A stretch of 64,000 nucleotides of DNA from the NCBI RefSeq assembly GCF_016432865.1, contig NC_067398.1:3038001-3102000 (forward strand). Reading direction: 5' to 3'. Numbering within the stretch: position 1 is the first letter of the stretch; the number at the start of each line of letters is the position of its first letter. This document shows, one piece after another, positions 55,396-64,000 of the stretch. Source of the DNA: Antechinus flavipes (Eukaryota). The position numbers and the translations under genes are program-made. Below the pieces are notes generated by a model. It was not told the DNA's origin and did no database searches. It worked only from the letters and a program-made list of their open reading frames with translations.

Positions 55396-55658
55396 CGGGT
55401 CGGGTCCGGGTCCGGAACCGGGTCGGCTTCGGGACGACTCCGCTCGAGGCGCCTGCGCAGCGCGGCAATCTCGGCCCGCAGGGTCCGGAGCTCCTGCTGC
55501 TGCCGCAGCCGCTGCCGCTGCCGCCGCTGCTGCTCCTCCTGCTCCCGCCGCTGCTCCCGCCGCTGCCACTGCCGCTGCCGCTGCCGCTGCTCCTTCAGCA
55601 GCTGCTCCCGCCGCTGCCGCCGCCGCTCCTGCTGCTCCCGCCGCCGCTGCTCTTCCAT
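55396..55658 (-). CDS. CENPP: centromere protein P coding exon 1 with a Q/R/E-rich N-terminal extension
   Basis: ACC ATG G Kozak start, donor ACC CG|GTAGGC, 263 nt. ELRTLRAEIAALRR matches human EVRALQAEIAALRR, and the phase joins exon 2. Confidence 0.88.
55491..55652. repeat. imperfect CNG (CAG/CGG/GAG) coding trinucleotide tract
   Basis: About 54 consecutive codons are almost all CAG, CGG or GAG on the minus strand. Confidence 0.9.
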
Positions 55659-55899
55659 GGTCTGTGCAGCCCCAGCGGAGAGGGTGCGGGGGTGGGGCGC
55701 GCGCCGGAGCCCAGCTGTTCAAGGCTCCCGCGCGCTGCCGGCACAGACCAACTCCTCACACTTGGGGGGGGAGACGGGGCTGGGGGCGGCGCGGGCCTGG
55801 CCGAGACCACCCCCCACAGAGTGTGTCCGAGACAGCGCTGAAGAAAACGTCGTCCCCACCAGCCCGCCCTCCCTGGAGGGTCCGTCACCCAGGCTGGGG

Positions 55900-56426
55900 A
55901 GCGAATAGCCGGCGACCCGTGGCTTCCGAACCCCTCCCCTGGAGGACCAGTTTACTTCGGAGCTGGTCCTTGAGTGACGTCAGAGTCCGGCACGGACAAA
56001 AGCTTCAACATCTCGATATGCGCATGCGCCTCGCTGAGGAGGCGGGGTCAATGAGCCCCAGCAGGAAGTTGAGGTAGAGTAGGGGAAAAGAAGGAAGGTG
56101 GTGTCACTTTATTTTGCTTCCCTCTGGATAACCGAGTTCGGCTGGCGTTCAAGGGTTCCCTAACTTAGCAGACAAGTGATTTCGATCCATCACCACGAGT
56201 CGCGACGGAGATACCAGACAAGATGCAAAGAAGACAGGGATATAGTCCGGAAACGGAGCGACCGACGGGGCGGGAACGGAGTCCCGGAACTTTGGATAGG
56301 GGAATCCGGGTCCCGCTTGCGGGGAAGAAGGAGAACGGACAGCTGCGCATTCACGTGACCGGAAGTCGGAAGCACGTGTATCGGAAGCCCGGGCCGGGCG
56401 AAGAGGTTCAGCTAGTGAAGAGCACC
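55900..56426. promoter_or_regulatory. bidirectional CpG-island promoter shared by CENPP and NOL8
   Basis: Divergent ATGs at 55658 (-) and 56427 (+). Motifs: CRE TGACGTCA 55975-55982, NRF1 GCGCATGCGC 56020-56029, E-boxes TCACGTGA 56351-56358 and CACGTG 56373-56378, ETS CCGGAAGT 56359-56366. Confidence 0.85.
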
Positions 56427-56565
56427 ATGGCTGCGAGCCCCGGAGAACGGCGGCTCTTCGTGGGCGGCCTCGGGCCCTCGGTCACGCAGGACGACGTGCG
56501 TGCGCAGCTGGGCCGCTTCGGGGTCGTGTCCTCCGTGGAGCTCGTGTCTCGGGTAAATGAGCTCG
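56427..56565 (+). CDS. NOL8: nucleolar protein 8 coding exon 1 (RRM start)
   Basis: ACC ATG G start and CTC G|GTAAGG donor, 139 nt. Encodes MAASPGERRLFVGGLGPSVTQDDVRAQLGRFG (RNP2 LFVGGL). Confidence 0.93.
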
Positions 56566-57106
56566 GTAAGGCCAAAGGGAAGGGAGCCCCAGCTCCAGTT
56601 TCCGCGCTGGGGCCGTCACCGGGTCCCGGGATCCCGCTTCGGCCCCTTTTCCCACTCAGAGTCCCGCAGGGCCCTTTGTCTCTGGCCTCCCCGAAGCCCA
56701 ACGTCCCGCCCCCATTCCGGAGCTCTTTCCGTCAGTTGTTCCAACCACTCTTGGCGGGTGCGCTTAGTGAGAGCTTGCTGAGTGCCCCGAACTTCCCTCA
56801 GAGGGAAGGTTGGGGGAGGGAGCCTACCCGCGTGCCTGGGGCACACCAGAGGTGCTAAATCCGTGCTCATGGTGCCTCATTCGGAAAATGGAGGAGCGGC
56901 AGCCCCCCCCCCAAGCAGCTATTAAACTCTTGCTGTGTAACGGTCTTCTGTGGGAAGATCTGAGGGTGAGGAGATGAGCGCCCCGGCCCTGGCTGACCTG
57001 GAGCTCTCTCCCTCCCGTCCTCCAGCTGGAGGCTGACCTCTGACCCTTGTGGGAGCCAAGGCCGGGACTCTCCCTGCATATGCATCTTTGCGAGTTCTCT
57101 CCCAGC

Positions 57107-57470
57107 CACGCCCTCCTCGCACGCTCCGCGCCCACACTCCCCGCACACGCTCCCTGCATGCTCACCCCCGCGCCCTCCCCGCACACACTCCCCGCGCCCA
57201 CGCTCACCCCCACGCCCTCCTCGCACGCTCCCCGCGCCCTCCCCGCACACACTCCCCTCGCACGCTCACCCCCGCGCCCTCCCCGCACACACTCCCCGTG
57301 CCCACACTCCCTGCACACGTTCTCCTTGCGTGCTCTCCTTGCACACGTTCTCTTTGCACACTGTCCTTGCACACTCTCCTTGCGTGAGTCCTCCTTGACC
57401 GCTCTCCTTGCACGCTCCCTGCGTGTGTTCTCGCACTCTCCTCTCGCGCTCCTTGCTCGCCCTTTGCTAA
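57107..57470. repeat. C-rich imperfect minisatellite in NOL8 intron 1
   Basis: cacgctccccgcgccctccccgcacacactcccc units followed by tctccttgcacac units. Confidence 0.8.
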
Positions 57471-57891
57471 GCGCTCTCTCCTGACCCGGTGTGATGTTCT
57501 CTGGGAGCGCCTTCCTTTCGCTCAGAAATCCCCCCAGACGCAGCCAGGAGTCCTTTATCGGCTCCTCCCTTGGCCCGGGCAGCTTTCTTAGCGGCCCCTC
57601 CCTCTCCCTGGCTCCTGCCGCTCGTCCTCCGCCGGCTTCAGCCTCCAGCACGAAGGGGGACGATGGAATGAATCTGTCTCAGCCTCCGAGAGCTTCCGGC
57701 GCCTTCCTGGCTCCGAGGCTTCTCCCTTCCACGCCCCACACTGAGCACAAACCACTCCTTCTATGGCTAGGAAACCGTTATCTATTGTAGGGTCAAGTCA
57801 GTGCTGAGCCAGGCTTGACCGCTGTCTCCTCAGTTCCACTTAGTTAGCACCTTGTGAGAATCCTAGCAGCCCGTCACGGTTTCTGCTAACG

Positions 57892-57910
57892 CCCCCCCCC
57901 CCCCCCCCCC
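57892..57910. repeat. C19 homopolymer
   Basis: 19 consecutive c just upstream of the branch-like CTAAC (57921-57925) of the NOL8 exon 2 acceptor. Confidence 0.9.
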
Positions 57911-57948
57911 GGTCGCGGCTCTAACCCGCTTTGTCCGCTCGCTCCCAG

Positions 57949-58011
57949 GGCTCCCGGAGAAGACCTTCGCCTATGCCAACGTGCGGCTCTCTGAAGGTGA
58001 CCTGAAGAAGT
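57949..58011 (+). CDS. NOL8: NOL8 coding exon 2
   Basis: ctcccAG|GG CTC...AAG T|GTGAGT, 63 nt. Encodes GLPEKTFAYANVRLSEGDLKK (RNP1-like KTFAYANV). Confidence 0.93.
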
Positions 58012-58656
58012 GTGAGTGTCGGGGCCTCCCCGTGTCTGCTCCCTTCTCTCCCTTTATGCGCCCCGTCCTGCGGCAAGGAAGGCTGACGGGCTGGGTCTCG
58101 GGGATCCTCGGTGCTCCCCCACAGCTCTCCCAGGGCCACGAGCCCATCGCTTCTCTCCCTTCTCCGAGGTGACATTGGGGGGGGGGGTGGCTCGTGAGTC
58201 CCCTCCCCCGTCTGGGCAGAGAGGCTTGAGGTCCTGGTGGGCAGACCCTGCAAGGCCGCGTGCGCAGCCAAGCTCCACTTTCTACAAGGGGACTTTTGTG
58301 AAGCCGGACCCGAGGGTCCCGCGGTCAGAGGCCAGGCCACCCCTGGGGCAGGGCCTGGTTCCCAGTGGGGTTGGGTGGGCAGGCCCACATTGCCTCTGAA
58401 AATCTGGGTGTAAGAGGACCTGGGCAGTGGGGGTTGGGACGCAGAAAGCGGGGGCCTGTGAGTCGGCACAGAGCCAGGAGCCGCACACAGGGCACAGCCA
58501 CGCCACGGGACGTTCCGGGCCCGGCTCTGGGAGGCCCCGATGCCCTCCCTGCCCGAGCTGCTGTGAGAAAAGTGGCAAAAACCTTGTGTTTGGGGCGCCT
58601 AGCTTGGGGGCGCCCCCTGGGGCGGGCACAAAGGAAAGGCCGGTTCTGTTCTGTAG

Positions 58657-58735
58657 GTATGTCCGCTTTAAACAAGACCACCTGGAAGGGCGGCACCCTG
58701 CAGGTCCAGCTGGCCAAAGAGAGCTTCCTGCACAG
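58657..58735 (+). CDS. NOL8: NOL8 coding exon 3
   Basis: ctgtAG|GT ATG TCC...CAC AG|GTATGG, 79 nt. Encodes CMSALNKTTWKGGTLQVQLAKESFLHR. Confidence 0.95.
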
Positions 58736-59067
58736 GTATGGCGGGAGCCATGGAGGCCAGAGAGCATACCTGGGGGGTGGGGAATGGGGGGAGGCTGTAC
58801 GTGTGCAGAGCCGCAGCAGCCGGGGGGGGTGGGGGTGGGAGTGAGCGTGTGCACATGCCCCAGAGAGGTCGGGGAGCAGGTCGCACCCTGCAGTGGTGCA
58901 GTGCCCGAGTAGGGGACCCTGCAGCCTTTAGAAGGGGCTGGGGGGAGCAAGAGAAGGCCGAAGGACACCAAAAACATGGGCCTGACCCTGGGTGCCAAGA
59001 TGCCCCCCTCTCCTGCCCGGGGGCACAAGGGTTACTCTGGCACCCTGGTTGGCATTCTGGGTTTCAG

Positions 59068-59203
59068 GCTGGCAGAGGAGAGGCTTCAAGCCAAAGCGCA
59101 GCAGGAGGCCTGCCCACAAGGGGGCAGCACAGCCAGCCCACCCACAATCTTGGAGTTCCATATGAAAAAAGCTGTGCCGGGAACCGAGGTGCCGGGACAC
59201 AAG
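59068..59203 (+). CDS. NOL8: NOL8 coding exon 4 (ends at a GC donor)
   Basis: tttcAG|G CTG GCA...CAC AAG|GCAGGT, 136 nt. Encodes LAEERL...FHMKKAVPGTEVPGHK. Confidence 0.9.
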
Positions 59204-59351
59204 GCAGGTGCGGGAGACCGGGGCGGGGGCGGGGATCCCCCATCCCACAGCCAAGCTCCACATTCGGCCCCTCCTCCCCCCCACGGTCATGCGGCTGGCC
59301 CGTGCGCTCGGCGTCCCCACCGTCACATCATCCATTTCCTTTCTGCCGTAG
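59204..59351 (+). other. NOL8: GC-AG intron (148 nt)
   Basis: Only the GC at 59204 gives phase 0 into GAC TGG GTC. The GT at 59208 is out of frame. Confidence 0.85.
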
Positions 59352-59420
59352 GACTGGGTCGTGAGCAAGTTTGGTAGAGTCCTGCCCGTCCTTCACCTGA
59401 GGAGCCAGAACCGGCGTAAG
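59352..59420 (+). CDS. NOL8: NOL8 coding exon 5
   Basis: ccgtAG|GAC TGG...CGT AAG|ATATCCTTT, 69 nt. Encodes DWVVSKFGRVLPVLHLRSQNRRK. Confidence 0.92.
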
Positions 59421-60270
59421 ATATCCTTTCCCCTGGTCCTCCGCCTTTATGCTCGGTCCCCCAGCATCCGTGTGGCCCCGCGGGCTCCCCGTATGTGCTT
59501 GCTCAGCCGCGGCTGTGGAAGAAGCCTCAGGCCGTGGGAACCTGACAGTCGGGATCGAAGGCTGCGGCCGAGCCCGGTTTGTTTACAGAGGGCTCCCTGG
59601 CCCCAGAGCCAGACGCGGAGGCCCAAGCCCTGGCTCTCTCCCACGCACGCATTTCCTTGGTCCCCAGGGTTTGGCCACCTTCCGACAGTTTGACTGATGG
59701 AAGCCCTCGGGGCTTAAGCCTGCTGGGAAGCCCACGTGCCCTCATAGGTTTCATGGAGTCAGCGTTAACTTAGGCAGGTGATTAAGGGACGTAGGCTGGA
59801 TTTAGGGAAGGGGCCCGTTCCCTGGAAAGACTAGCAGCATCCTTGGCTCGCATTGAAACACCACGGATAAGCTAGGAACTGCATTGGGGGATTCACCCCA
59901 TTGGCTGCCCCTGCATGGTCAGCAGTCTCGTGGGACCCGGTCCTGATGGTGGGCCGTCTTGAGTGGGAACGTTCCCTTGGGAACTCCGAAGGGGCCACCT
60001 GGGGCTCCTGGGTTCTGAGTCACCCTCACCCAACCCAGAGTGGTTGCCGCTAACTAACGATGTAGCGTGAGCTTTGACACGTGCAGAGGGTAAAATGTTA
60101 GAAATGTAGAGGTACAAAGACTCCCAGAGATCACCTTGCTTAAATTACTCGCTTTCCAGAGGAGTAAACTGAAGGCCCCAGAAGCCCGGCTCAGGGTCCT
60201 CTTTCTGGTTTTGCAGAATGTTTGTTTTTCTGTTAAACGACTTTTGTTTCCTACCTTAACTTTTCCTAAC
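59421..60270 (+). other. NOL8: U12-type (minor spliceosome) AT-AC intron, 850 nt
   Basis: 5' ATATCCTTT, branch site TACCTTAAC 60252-60260, 3' AC at 60269-60270. Splicing restores RRK|ILKYDPSKYCHNLKK (human KRK|IIKYDPSKYCHNLKK). Confidence 0.92.
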
Positions 60271-62046
60271 ATCTTAAAATACGATCCATCAAAATATTGC
60301 CACAACCTAAAGAAGTTTGAGCAAGACGTCACAAAAACCGTCTCCGTTTCTGACCTCACTTGGAAATTGGAAGGGGGAGATGATGTGATGAGTAAGAAGC
60401 GACAAGGGCAGTTCCCTGCCTTCAGAAGCCATCCAGTGAAGAGAGCAAAGGTGGAGGGCAGTCCCTTCCCCTCCTCCCGAGCCGCGGGACGTCCTGAGCC
60501 GCCATCTGCAGCCCACCCAAACACGGCGCGTCCCCAGCCAGCTGCCTCCCAGAAGGCCCCGAAGCCAGAAGCGGGCCCCCTTCGCTCTTCAAAGTCACTC
60601 AGCGTCCGAAGCAGAAACGCCACGTCTGATGACGACGTTGATTCTGAAGAAGAATTGAAAGCCATGATAGCAGAAGAGAAATCCCGAAGGCCTGCCCTCC
60701 CCGAGACAAACGGCACTGAAAGGGATTCCTTTGAAGTGGTCAGCAGTGACTTCAAGCCAAACCCCCCCAGAGCGGGGGGGACACCCAGAAGACCCCAGGC
60801 CCCTCGCTCAGACAGCCCCGCTCAGCTTGCCGAAGACGACCAGGAGTACGACTCGGGGGACACAGACGAAATCATTGCCTGCGGGAAAAACGGCGACCAG
60901 AGCAAAGACGAGCCAAAAATGTCACCAAAAGAGAAACCCAAAGCAAAAGCGAAGGCCGCTGTGAGAAACGGAACAAATTGTGCCCGTGCTACCCGTGGGA
61001 TTAACAAAAGGGAGTCAGCCGATTGTACAAAGCACGTCACTAAGAAGCCGGGGGGCGCGCCCCCCGGATCCGAGGATGGCGAGTCTGAGGAGGATCTGGA
61101 CTACGAAGCCATGATGACTAACTGCTATCGCCTGGACCTCACCTTGACCGACTTGGAAAAGCTGGCAACCGAAGCTGCCGAGGGCCCTGGGGGGAGCGTC
61201 CGACGGACTAAGCGGGCGCTCCCCGAGGGAGAGGGTGCCGGTTCTGGCCAGAAGACTAAGAAGGCTCCTAAAGGGGCTCGGTGCATCAATCCCAAGGACA
61301 TCCTGGCTTCCCTCTTAGAAGGGGAGGAGAAAACCAGGGACCAGAACCCACCGAAGGAAAGTATGCCGAAAGCCAAGTTTCAGGCTTTCAAAGGGGTGGG
61401 GGCGCTCTATGGCGGGGAGACACCAAAAAGGCCCTTTAGGAACGGTGGAATCGCCGCTCATGTAAAAGCACCCAATTCTCTGAAACAGGCAGCATCTCCC
61501 ATTGGTTCTCTGGGAAAACAAGCCTTTGATTTGAATACTCTTTCTGGTGATGAAATGTCTGCGTCCCAAGATGGGAGGGAAGCGGAGGAGGCAAACAGCC
61601 CTCCACATCATCCTAAAAAACCGCCAAGGAGGCGGGCAGCCACTGGAGAGCAGCTTGATGCTGGCCCCTCCCCCTCCCCTGGTTCTGCTTCTGGCCTGTC
61701 CCCGTTGGGCTCCAAGAAGCCCTCGAGGCTTTCTGCAGAAACTTGTAGGATGGACTCGAGAGGGCGTGGTGGCCTTGGCGCCTCGGCAGTGGGAGACCCC
61801 TGCCGGGAAAGCAGTGATCCCGTCACCCTCGGACCCCCGCCAGGGACGGCCTCTTCTCGTGTGCCAGAGAAGGACCCCCCGGGGACGGTCCAGAAGGAGC
61901 CGGAAGGTCCCCGTGATGCTCCTGCCGATGCCGTCGGCCCTCAGAAGCCCTCTCAGGATAACGAGAAGCGCTTGGCGGCCTTGGAGGAGAGGAAGAGAGC
62001 GCGGGAGCTGCAGAAGCGGTTGGTGCACAGCGCTCTCTCCGGCTTG
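60271..62046 (+). CDS. NOL8: NOL8 large coding exon 6
   Basis: 1776 nt open frame ending TTG|GTGAGT. Contains YDSGDTDEII, YEAMMTNCYRLDLTL, KFQAFKGVG and DNEKRLAALE, as in recalled human NOL8. Confidence 0.95.
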
Positions 62047-62313
62047 GTGAGTGTCTTCCTCGTGAGCCTGGGCAAAAGCTCGCTCCCCAAAAGCCCCCAC
62101 ACTTCCCTGAGGGGGTTGAAGCACATTGGCCAGCTGGGTTCTTGTCTACACTGGCCTTGCCACCAGGGGACCAGTGGTTTTCTTGGCTCGGTGTGGCTGA
62201 GTGCCAGCTAACGAGCGGATGCAGAGATGGTGCCCGCCGTCTGGGCGCGCTGGCTCTCGCTTACGGTCCGGATTCGGGGCTGTAATCTCGCTGCCTCTTT
62301 CCTTGCCTCCCAG

Positions 62314-62430
62314 GACGGCCGGCCAGTGAGCAAACCGACGCACATCCTGTTCAACTCCGACAGCGAAGAAGAGACGGACGTGAAAGGTGACGCCCATGAG
62401 AAGCCCCTTCCGGACAGTGGCGGCAAACGA
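62314..62430 (+). CDS. NOL8: NOL8 coding exon 7
   Basis: cccAG|GAC GGC...AAA CGA|GTAGGT, 117 nt. Encodes DGRPVSKPTHILFNSDSEEE. The donor was chosen by phase. Confidence 0.85.
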
Positions 62431-62865
62431 GTAGGTGGCGATGGTAGCTCCTTCCCAGGGCCGGCATGGCTGACGGGCCGGGGCGCCCGCTGCCCGGGCG
62501 GTTCTGTGGTCGGGCCCCCTTCTGCGGTCTGTGTGCTGCCCGGCCGGCTCTCTGCTGGCGTTGGAGGATCGCCTTCCTCCTTTGGGGAACCTCCCCTCCC
62601 AGCGAGGCTGCCCGCCTTCCCCGCGGCTCCCTGCCTCTCTGCACTGGACGACCTTGGGTCCTTCCTCTGACCCCTTCCAGACTGAACTCCGGGCCTTGAA
62701 GCCCAGAAACGAGTGCGGATCCCGCTTGTGCCCCTGCAGTTAATGTGGAGAATTCTCCGGGCCAGCTGGCTTGTGGTGGAGCTGTAGGGAGAGGGTTCTG
62801 GGACGTTATGACTTAGAGACCCTCCAGCTTTAGCGCAGCCGTAATCGCCGTTTGGGTTTTTTAAG

Positions 62866-62979
62866 GATTCTAAAGCCTCCGGGAGACTCTTTGAGAGCAG
62901 CGAGGACGAGGAGGAGACCGAGGAGGACCGAGCCCGCTTCCAAATTAAGCCCCAGTTTGAAGGCAAAGCTGGAAAGAAG
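62866..62979 (+). CDS. NOL8: NOL8 coding exon 8
   Basis: ttttaAG|GAT TCT...AAG AAG|GTTGGT, 114 nt. Encodes DSKASGRLFESSEDEEE...RFQIKPQFEGKAGKK. Confidence 0.92.
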
Positions 62980-63310
62980 GTTGGTGACGGGTGACCTGGG
63001 TGATTGGGCGGCGCTGCGGCTGCGCCGAGTCCTGCTGGGCGCACGGGGGAGCCGGACGCTTGGGATTCTCTCGGGTTTGGTAGGAAGGTGTGAGTGGGCT
63101 TAGGAGTTGTCTGGGCTGGAAATCCCAAAGCCCTGAATTCAAGTTCCGCCCAGGACAGGCTGGGTGACCCTGCGTAAGTCATGTGATCCCAGAGTCGCTC
63201 TTGCCGCTCTGAGGTCGAGGGATGGGCTGAGTTTTGTCACGTGGGAGTCCCAGGTCCAGTGCCCATCCCTGCCCCTCTGCATGGGGTTATTGTCTGTTTT
63301 CTTCGGACAG

Positions 63311-63401
63311 CTCATGAGTTTACAGTCCCACTTTGGCGCTGATGACCGGTTTCGAATGGACGCTCGCTTTCTGGAAAGTGAGAGTGAAGAGGAAGAGGAA
63401 G
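63311..63401 (+). CDS. NOL8: NOL8 coding exon 9 (gene continues beyond the window)
   Basis: ggacAG|CTC ATG...GAA G|GTGAGT, 91 nt. Encodes LMSLQSHFGADDRFRMDARFLESESEEEE. Confidence 0.94.
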
Positions 63402-63895
63402 GTGAGTTTTATCGTTCCGCGGTTTTCCCCGCTGACAACCAGACAACGAGATTCTTACTGGAGGAGCCTCGCTTCATCCCCACGCCCCATCCGGAGATTT
63501 AGGGCCCCTCTCCCTCCTACCTCTGTCACCTTCCTCCCTCTTCCTGTTTCTGCCGACTTGTTCCTTGGAAGAGAAATGGATGGAAGGAATGACAGTCTTT
63601 GAGGGAGTGGAGCCGTCTGGGCAGAGGGTCAGACAGGGCAGGGGGCAGGACTGGGACGCAATTTCCTTTTGAGACAGCCCCCAGTGAGTATCAGGAGGGA
63701 GACACAAACCCGGCTCAGCTCGGCCCTCATGGAGCATCTTAGACAAAGGTGTAGACGGGGGCGGGGCGTGCGGCCTCGGGGCTTTCCCCTGAAATGGTCT
63801 TTTTCTTTCTGTAAATAGTATTTGTTTCTTTCCTTATTACGTGCAAAGGTGTTTTTAAAATTAATTTATTTCTTATTTTTAAATTTAATACGTTA

Positions 63896-64000
63896 GCGCC
63901 ACTAGGTGGCGCAGTGGATAGAGCATCAGCCCTCAAGTCAGGAGGACCTGAGTTCACATTTGCCCTCAGGCACTTAACACTTCCAGGCTGTATAACTCTG
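63896..64000 (+). mobile_element. marsupial tRNA-derived CORE-SINE 5' end (WSINE1/MAR1-like), cut by the window edge
   Basis: ctaggtggcgcagtggatagagc (A box)...caggaggacctgagttcac (B box)...cacttaacacttcc. Confidence 0.85.

What the first reader, a model, noticed from the sequence alone, without database searches (positions are those of the whole stretch)
59421..60270. U12-type AT-AC intron in NOL8
The intron has an exact U12 donor ATATCCTTT, a U12 branch site (TACCTTAAC) ending 10 nt from an AC terminus, and splicing restores the conserved K|ILKYDPSKYCHNLKK. AT-AC introns are very rare and are often mis-annotated; the ORF track here wrongly runs exon 6 back into the intron. With the GC-AG intron upstream, the 69-nt exon 5 has non-GT-AG introns on both sides. 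That could make this nucleolar RRM protein rate-limited by minor-spliceosome activity. I cannot confirm whether it is already catalogued in other species.
Basis: partly seen in the sequence, partly recalled or inferred. Interest (0 to 1): 0.7.

Follow-up and report, generated by a model that had tools for sequence, protein, structure and literature searches.

The report
Known minor (AT-AC) intron in NOL8
The stretch is a genuine minor-spliceosome (U12-type, AT-AC) intron in the marsupial NOL8 gene, but the same intron is already catalogued in human and mouse and is already correct in this species' public annotation, so it is ordinary.

Summary
Window 59421-60270 is an 850-nt, phase-0 intron. 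It starts with ATATCCTTT, the only copy in 64 kb. It carries TACCTTAAC at 60252-60260 and ends in AC at 60269-60270. Removing it joins ...SQNRRK to ILKYDPSKYCHNLKK.

That join is what the public NOL8 protein of Antechinus flavipes (P0001, 100% identical to the window) contains, and 83 of 110 public NOL8 models share it.

The intron is not new. Human NOL8 was listed as a U12-intron gene in 2007. The Minor Intron Database (MIDB) lists the mouse and human NOL8 minor intron with donor AAA|ATATCCTTT. In human cells the intron below the same 69-nt exon doubles its retention after knockdown of the minor-spliceosome protein RNPC3.

About 26 public NOL8 models from primates, other mammals and birds are wrong at this junction. 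Their spurious residues translate the U12 motifs, which indirectly suggests conservation across amniotes.

No RNA reads were available for this species, so the junction rests on sequence, homology and the public model. The rate-limiting idea stays an inference.

Verdict: real, correctly read, already known, low interest.

The parts
59068..59203 (+). NOL8 coding exon 4 (...FHMKKAVPGTEVPGHK)
   Evidence: tblastn of P0001 on the window and a local junction check
59204..59351 (+). Intron 4, 148 nt, GC-AG (AAG|GCAGGTGCG ... TTCTGCCGTAG|GAC), major-spliceosome type
   Evidence: It is the only recognised dinucleotide pair that reproduces GHK|DWVV of P0001
59352..59420 (+). NOL8 coding exon 5, 69 nt, phase 0 at both ends (DWVVSKFGRVLPVLHLRSQNRRK)
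   Evidence: The human exon above the orthologous intron is also 69 nt, from published intron coordinates
59421..60270 (+). Intron 5, 850 nt, U12-type AT-AC, phase 0
   Evidence: The junction is present in the public protein P0001
59421..59429 (+). U12-type 5' splice site ATATCCTTT. With the last exon codon it reads AAG|ATATCCTTT
   Evidence: It is the single copy in the window. The same 12-mer is scored 94.6 (mouse) and 99.2 (human) for the ZDHHC18 and TCEA1 minor introns in MIDB Table S2
60252..60260 (+). U12-type branch-point sequence TACCTTAAC (core CCTTAAC 60254-60260). The candidate branch adenosines are 60258 and 60259, 11-12 nt before the last intron base
   Evidence: The 12-mer CCTACCTTAACT resembles MIDB entries such as TTTACCTTAACT (score 92.1) and TGTACCTTAACC (85.0)
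60269..60270 (+). Terminal AC of the intron (3' splice site ...TTTTCCTAAC|ATC)
60271..62046 (+). NOL8 coding exon 6, 1776 nt (ILKYDPSKYCHNLKK ... HSALSGL), followed by donor GTGAGT at 62047
   Evidence: It is 100% identical to P0001 residues 231-822
59416..59421 (+). Candidate cryptic major-type donor GTAAGA, 5 nt upstream of the U12 donor. It is not used in any model
   Evidence: Joined to the AG at 60216 it shifts the frame and stops after 6 codons (RSQNR-QCLFFC*)
60196..60216 (+). Candidate cryptic major-type acceptor (pyrimidine-rich tract + TTTTGCAG), 54 nt upstream of the AC and open in the exon-6 frame
   Evidence: Noted separately by the scan as s1-209018. No in-frame GT donor partner exists near exon 5

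Best explanation
Window 59421-60270 is intron 5 of the NOL8 gene of the yellow-footed antechinus. It is a U12-type (minor-spliceosome) intron of the AT-AC subtype, orthologous to the catalogued NOL8 minor intron of human and mouse.

Shown here: both sequence signals are present, their spacing fits, and the junction gives the conserved protein.

Inferred from established knowledge of the pathway: U11 snRNP, and later U6atac, pair with ATATCCTTT at the donor. U12 snRNP pairs with CCTTAAC and bulges a branch adenosine 11-12 nt from the 3' end. The intron is cut out between AAG| and |ATC.

If the intron is retained, translation runs 90 codons into it and stops at TGA 59691, so the transcript cannot make NOL8. 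Output of NOL8 mRNA should therefore follow minor-spliceosome activity, as for other minor-intron genes.
For: Sequence evidence in the window:
- The donor is an exact 9/9 match to the U12 consensus and is unique in the window.
- The branch motif core is 7/7, ending 10 nt before the terminal AC.
- Of the equivalent junction placements, only AT-AC is a recognised pair.

Protein evidence:
- The public Antechinus flavipes NOL8 protein P0001 is 100% identical to the window and carries ...SQNRRK-ILKYDPSKY....
- 83 of 110 public NOL8 models share a clean K/Q|[IV] junction.
- K230 and K233-N242 are invariant across marsupial, placental, bird and lizard sequences.

Published evidence for the orthologue:
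- MIDB Table S2 lists mouse and human NOL8 with donor AAA|ATATCCTTT and branch sites TTGTCCTTGACT and TGTTTCTTGACT.
- Human NOL8 was listed as a U12-intron gene in 2007.
- The human intron lies directly below a 69-nt exon. Its retention ratio rises from 0.08-0.11 to 0.17-0.23 after RNPC3 knockdown (PMC12332006 Dataset EV2).
- Mouse Nol8 is named among genes with affected U12 introns in Zrsr1/2 mutants.

Indirect conservation evidence: mis-modelled proteins from birds and primates carry ISF after the lysine and SLT or FLD ... N before I[IV]KYDP. These are the in-frame translations of ATATCCTTT and of TCCTTAAC or TTCCTTGAC ... AAC.
Against: No RNA run was found, and the four runs laid were all genomic contigs without exon-exon joints.

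The branch site has A instead of T or C just before CCTTAAC.

A GTAAGA lies 5 nt upstream of the donor and a good AG acceptor 54 nt upstream of the AC, so some major-type cryptic splicing cannot be excluded.

Orthology to human and mouse rests on published 12-mers, exon length and the protein junction.
Confidence: 0.95

Rival explanations
1. The region is spliced mainly by the major spliceosome through the GT at 59416 and the AG at 60216 (an 801-nt GT-AG intron), and the U12-like motifs are incidental.
For: GTAAGA at 59416-59421 matches the intronic part of the major donor consensus. TCCTCTTTCTGGTTTTGCAG| is a good acceptor.
Against: The join shifts the frame and stops after 6 codons. It destroys the invariant K230/K233-N242 block. 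No public model of this species uses it. The exonic side of that donor (GGC) is poor. A perfect U12 donor together with a branch site at exactly the right places is not credible as chance.
Confidence: 0.02
2. It is an AT-AC intron removed by the major spliceosome (the rare U2-type AT-AC class).
For: The terminal dinucleotides alone do not define the spliceosome class.
Against: By established knowledge, U2-type AT-AC introns lack the TATCCTT donor and the TCCTTAAC branch site close to the 3' end. Both are present here. The human orthologue responds to knockdown of the U11/U12 protein RNPC3.
Confidence: 0.02
3. It is not an intron at all, but an assembly or annotation artefact, with exons 5 and 6 belonging to different transcripts.
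Against: Contigs from two samples of one organism label (X1, X2) run across the whole stretch at even depth, and contigs of two relatives (X3, X4) cover most of it, including both splice sites. The joined protein is conserved across amniotes.
Confidence: 0.01

Closest known systems
Human and mouse NOL8 minor intron (MIDB; listed among U12-intron genes by Chang et al. 2007, PMC1874599)
   Same: Same gene. The intron follows the same lysine codon and precedes I[IL]KYDPSKY. The donor ATATCCTTT is identical. The branch site is of the CCTTRAC type close to the 3' end. The upstream exon is 69 nt in human. The subtype is AT-AC.
   Different: Length is 850 nt here, against 939 nt in mouse and 2479 nt in human. 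The last exon codon is AAG instead of AAA. The branch site is CCTTAAC instead of CCTTGAC or TCTTGAC. An upstream GC-AG intron is shown here; I could not check whether it is GC-AG in other species.
U12-type AT-AC introns in general (for example those of ZDHHC18, TCEA1 and PHB2 in MIDB Table S2)
   Same: The donor 12-mer AAGATATCCTTT is identical to those of ZDHHC18 and TCEA1. The branch 12-mer is close to TGTACCTTAACC of PHB2.
   Different: Nothing of note. This is a textbook example.

Membership tests
U12-type (minor-spliceosome) intron | 5' splice site matching /RTATCCTT(T) | tested here: met
   ATATCCTTT at 59421-59429, 9/9, unique in the window
U12-type (minor-spliceosome) intron | Branch-point sequence TCCTTRAY, with the branch adenosine about 10-15 nt from the 3' splice site and no long polypyrimidine tract between them | tested here: met
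   TACCTTAAC at 60252-60260. The adenosines at 60258/60259 lie 11-12 nt before the last base. Only TTTTCCTA lies between. There is one mismatch, A for T/C, before the core
U12-type (minor-spliceosome) intron | Removal depends on U11, U12, U4atac and U6atac snRNPs | not testable with these tools
   Evidence exists only for orthologues. Human retention doubles on RNPC3 knockdown, and mouse Nol8 is named among genes with affected U12 introns in Zrsr1/2 mutants
U12-type (minor-spliceosome) intron | The junction is observed in transcripts | tested here: inconclusive
   No RNA run was found, and the laid runs were genomic. The public protein model has the junction, but its RNA support was not visible to me
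AT-AC subtype | Terminal dinucleotides AT and AC | tested here: met
   59421-59422 AT and 60269-60270 AC. This is the only recognised pair among the five equivalent placements
Orthologue of the catalogued NOL8 minor intron | Same position and phase in the coding sequence as the human and mouse minor intron | tested here: met
   The MIDB donors read AAA|ATATCCTTT, lysine codon then intron. The human upstream exon is 69 nt. The K|I[ILVM]KYDP junction is conserved.
GC-AG major-type intron (upstream neighbour) | GC at the donor with an otherwise consensus-like site, and AG at the acceptor | tested here: met
   AAG|GCAGGT ... TTCTGCCGTAG| at 59204-59351, the only recognised pair that keeps GHK|DWVV. 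Conservation in other species was not tested

The most novel reading that the evidence does not exclude
In dasyurid marsupials, three features might together form a switch: the 69-nt exon 5 flanked by a weak GC-AG intron and the AT-AC intron, the GTAAGA donor 5 nt upstream of the U12 donor, and the strong AG acceptor 54 nt upstream of the AC. When minor-spliceosome activity falls, the major spliceosome would take over and make a frame-shifted, decay-prone NOL8 transcript, tying output of this nucleolar protein to minor-spliceosome activity more sharply than simple intron retention would.
Probability: 0.05. Interest if true: 0.3.

Novelty: already known. Interest (0 to 1): 0.1.

Why it matters
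It matters little beyond correct annotation. NOL8 is an established minor-intron gene, and finding the intron in a marsupial only confirms that it predates the split of marsupials and placentals. The indirect protein evidence suggests it predates the split from birds too.

The one practical by-product is that about a quarter of public NOL8 protein models, mainly from birds and some primates, carry spurious residues at this junction because gene predictors forced other splice sites. That is a useful warning for anyone aligning NOL8 or training on those models.

Tried and rejected
- RNA evidence: the look-up of sequencing runs found no RNA run. Read laying on 56200-62100 with four runs showed only genomic contigs and no exon-exon joints. 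The list of base differences in relatives was truncated, so conservation of the motifs in close relatives could not be read from it.
The other DNA collections hold no animal genomes, so I left them unused.
- Hidden RNA gene in the intron or its neighbours: Rfam at E up to 0.1 gave nothing for 55500-64000.
- The supplement of the intronIC/IAOD paper does not mention NOL8. No supplements were held for the Zrsr1/2 paper or the 2024 intron taxonomy paper.
- A GT-AG reading through 59416/60216 was considered and rejected because it shifts the frame.
- A major-type GT 4 nt into intron 4 (AAGGCAG|GT) was considered and rejected for the same reason.
Exons were searched by reference, one at a time, and only joins of about 40 nt were made inside scripts to test boundaries.
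- No human DNA was fetched or compared. All human information comes from published tables.

Full report
**What is there**

The window carries the 5' part of NOL8 on the + strand, head to head with CENPP. The best protein hit agrees: 'nucleolar protein 8 [Antechinus flavipes]', P0001, 1196 aa, 100% identical to the window.

I mapped P0001 back onto the window with tblastn and tested each boundary against the protein with short local joins. This gave the following coding exons:

| Exon | Coordinates |
|---|---|
| 1 | 56223-56565 |
| 2 | 57949-58011 |
| 3 | 58657-58735 |
| 4 | 59068-59203 |
| 5 | 59352-59420 |
| 6 | 60271-62046 |

Introns 1-3 are GT-AG. Intron 4 (59204-59351, 148 nt) is GC-AG. 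Intron 5 (59421-60270, 850 nt) is AT-AC.

**The observation**

- Exon 5 ends ...CGT AAG at 59420.
- The intron opens with ATATCCTTT (59421-59429).
- TACCTTAAC lies at 60252-60260, ending 10 nt before the last intron base.
- The intron closes with AC (60269-60270).
- Exon 6 opens ATC TTA AAA TAC GAT CCA, giving K|ILKYDPSKYCHNLKK.

ATATCCTTT occurs once on both strands of the 64-kb window (0.21 expected), and the looser RTATCCTT also occurs only here. CCTTAAC occurs six times in 128 kb of strand. A donor motif exactly at the codon boundary that homology requires, together with a branch motif in the narrow permitted window before the acceptor, is not a chance event.

Because ATATC at the donor resembles ACATC at the acceptor, five placements of the junction give the same mRNA. 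Only 59420|60271 has recognised ends.

**What it is**

It is a textbook U12-type intron of the AT-AC subtype, in phase 0.
- The 12-mer AAG|ATATCCTTT is letter for letter the donor of the ZDHHC18 and TCEA1 minor introns in MIDB Table S2, scored there at 94.6 (mouse) and 99.2 (human).
- The branch 12-mer CCTACCTTAACT is close to catalogued ones such as TTTACCTTAACT (92.1) and TGTACCTTAACC (85.0).
- The candidate branch adenosines (60258, 60259) sit 11-12 nt from the 3' end. By established knowledge of U12-type introns, that is in the preferred range.

**Is the junction real?**

I could not get transcript evidence. No RNA run holds the stretch. The four runs I laid were genomic contigs, which run across or cover nearly all of exons and introns at even depth and show no exon-exon joints.

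The junction is supported in three other ways:
- The public protein of this species has ...HLRSQNRRK-ILKYDPSKY....
- 83 of 110 public NOL8 models from marsupials, placentals, birds and lizards have the same clean junction.
- In an eight-species alignment, K230 (the last residue of exon 5) and K233-N242 are invariant, within the best-conserved block outside the RRM domain.

Pfam recognises only the RRM in exon 1.

**Already known**

- Human NOL8 appears in the 2007 table of U12-intron genes of RNA metabolism (PMC1874599).
- MIDB (PMC6717393) lists a minor intron in mouse Nol8 (939 nt) and human NOL8 (2479 nt), with status 'Both'. The donor is AAA|ATATCCTTT in both species. The branch sites are TTGTCCTTGACT (mouse) and TGTTTCTTGACT (human).
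- Published IRFinder coordinates place the human intron directly below a 69-nt exon, the same exon length as here. They show its retention ratio rising from 0.08-0.11 in control A549 cells to 0.17-0.23 after knockdown of the U11/U12 protein RNPC3. The flanking upstream major intron rises as well (PMC12332006 Dataset EV2).
- Mouse Nol8 is named among genes with affected U12 introns in Zrsr1/2 mutant embryos (PMC7312986).

**An indirect view of conservation and mis-annotation**

Twenty-six or 27 of the 110 public models have extra residues at this junction.
- Seven bird models read ...KNK-ISF.... ISF is the in-frame translation of ATA TCC TTT, that is, read-through of the U12 donor. The antechinus retention frame gives the same RRK-ISF.
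- Many bird models end the spurious stretch with SLTxTN before IVKYDP. Several primate models end it with LLFLDL(H/R/D)N before (V/I)IKYDP.
- SLT fits TCC TTA ACN, FLD fits TTC CTT GAC, and the final N fits AAC. These are the U12 branch motif and the terminal AC, at the same spacing as in the antechinus (TLTFPN|IL).

Codon degeneracy means this is suggestive, not proof. That does not apply to this species, whose public model is right.

**How it works, and what is inferred**

Shown: the signals, the spacing, the junction and the consequence of failure. If the intron stays in, the frame runs 90 codons into it to TGA at 59691.

Inferred from the established pathway: recognition by U11/U12, then catalysis with U6atac/U4atac; slower or more limiting removal than for major introns; and exon-definition contacts across the 69-nt exon with the major-type acceptor of intron 4.

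The specific claim that NOL8 is 'rate-limited' is not established. Basal retention in human A549 cells is about 10%, and NOL8 is absent from MIDB's table of minor introns retained in normal tissues (no hit in file 6).

**Rivals**

- A major-type GT-AG intron from GTAAGA (59416) to TTTTGCAG| (60216) is conceivable as a cryptic route. It shifts the frame and stops after six codons.
- The in-frame AG at 60216 has no in-frame GT partner near exon 5. It lies upstream of the U12 branch site, so the minor spliceosome could not use it with that branch site.
- A major-type AT-AC intron is excluded by the U12 donor and branch motifs.

**Limits**

- I could not see whether the GC donor of intron 4 is conserved.
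- The variant list from the related runs was truncated.

**Verdict**

The feature is a known, catalogued minor intron found in one more species. Interest is low.

Noticed in passing
window 56223-56429: The public A. flavipes NOL8 model (P0001) starts 68 residues upstream of the methionine at 56427 (M69, MAASPGERRLFVGGL). All seven aligned orthologues start at that methionine, so the N-terminal extension is probably an over-extended start.
   Followed up: partly
proteins P0018, P0021, P0027, P0029, P0042, P0047, P0056, P0078-P0082, P0085, P0088-P0092, P0104, P0106, P0114, P0119, P0120 and others: About a quarter of public NOL8 protein models (primates, a desman, a sengi, many birds) carry intron-derived residues at the exon 5/6 junction. 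They show ISF after the lysine, or SLT/FLD...N before I[IV]KYDP. These are gene-prediction errors at the AT-AC intron.
   Followed up: yes
window 57106-57417 (NOL8 intron 1): A C-rich minisatellite with periods of 13, 28, 42, 64 and 104 nt. Contigs of two runs (X1, X2) skip 104 and 80 nt here, so its length varies.
   Followed up: partly
window 57579-57972 (NOL8 intron 1): Word depth in all four genomic runs jumps from about 20 to between about 3,000 and 43,000, with many loose ends. This is a very high-copy interspersed repeat.
   Followed up: no
published human data (PMC6717393 Table S7; PMC12332006 source data): Both papers' custom pipeline flags cryptic 5' and 3' splice sites inside the human NOL8 minor intron at indices of about 0.6-1.0, and its retention index is about 0.75. 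IRFinder on the same A549 RNA-seq data as the second paper counts about 275 exact junction reads and 10% retention. The conflict is unexplained. It may be a junction-placement artefact at AT-AC ends, since five equivalent placements exist in the antechinus.
   Followed up: partly
window 59690: Contigs of two related organisms (X3, X4) carry a 4-nt insertion (TGAC) inside the minor intron. X1 and X2 differ at 60239 (G>A, 13 nt upstream of the branch motif), and X1 differs at 60282 (C>T, synonymous TAC>TAT).
   Followed up: no
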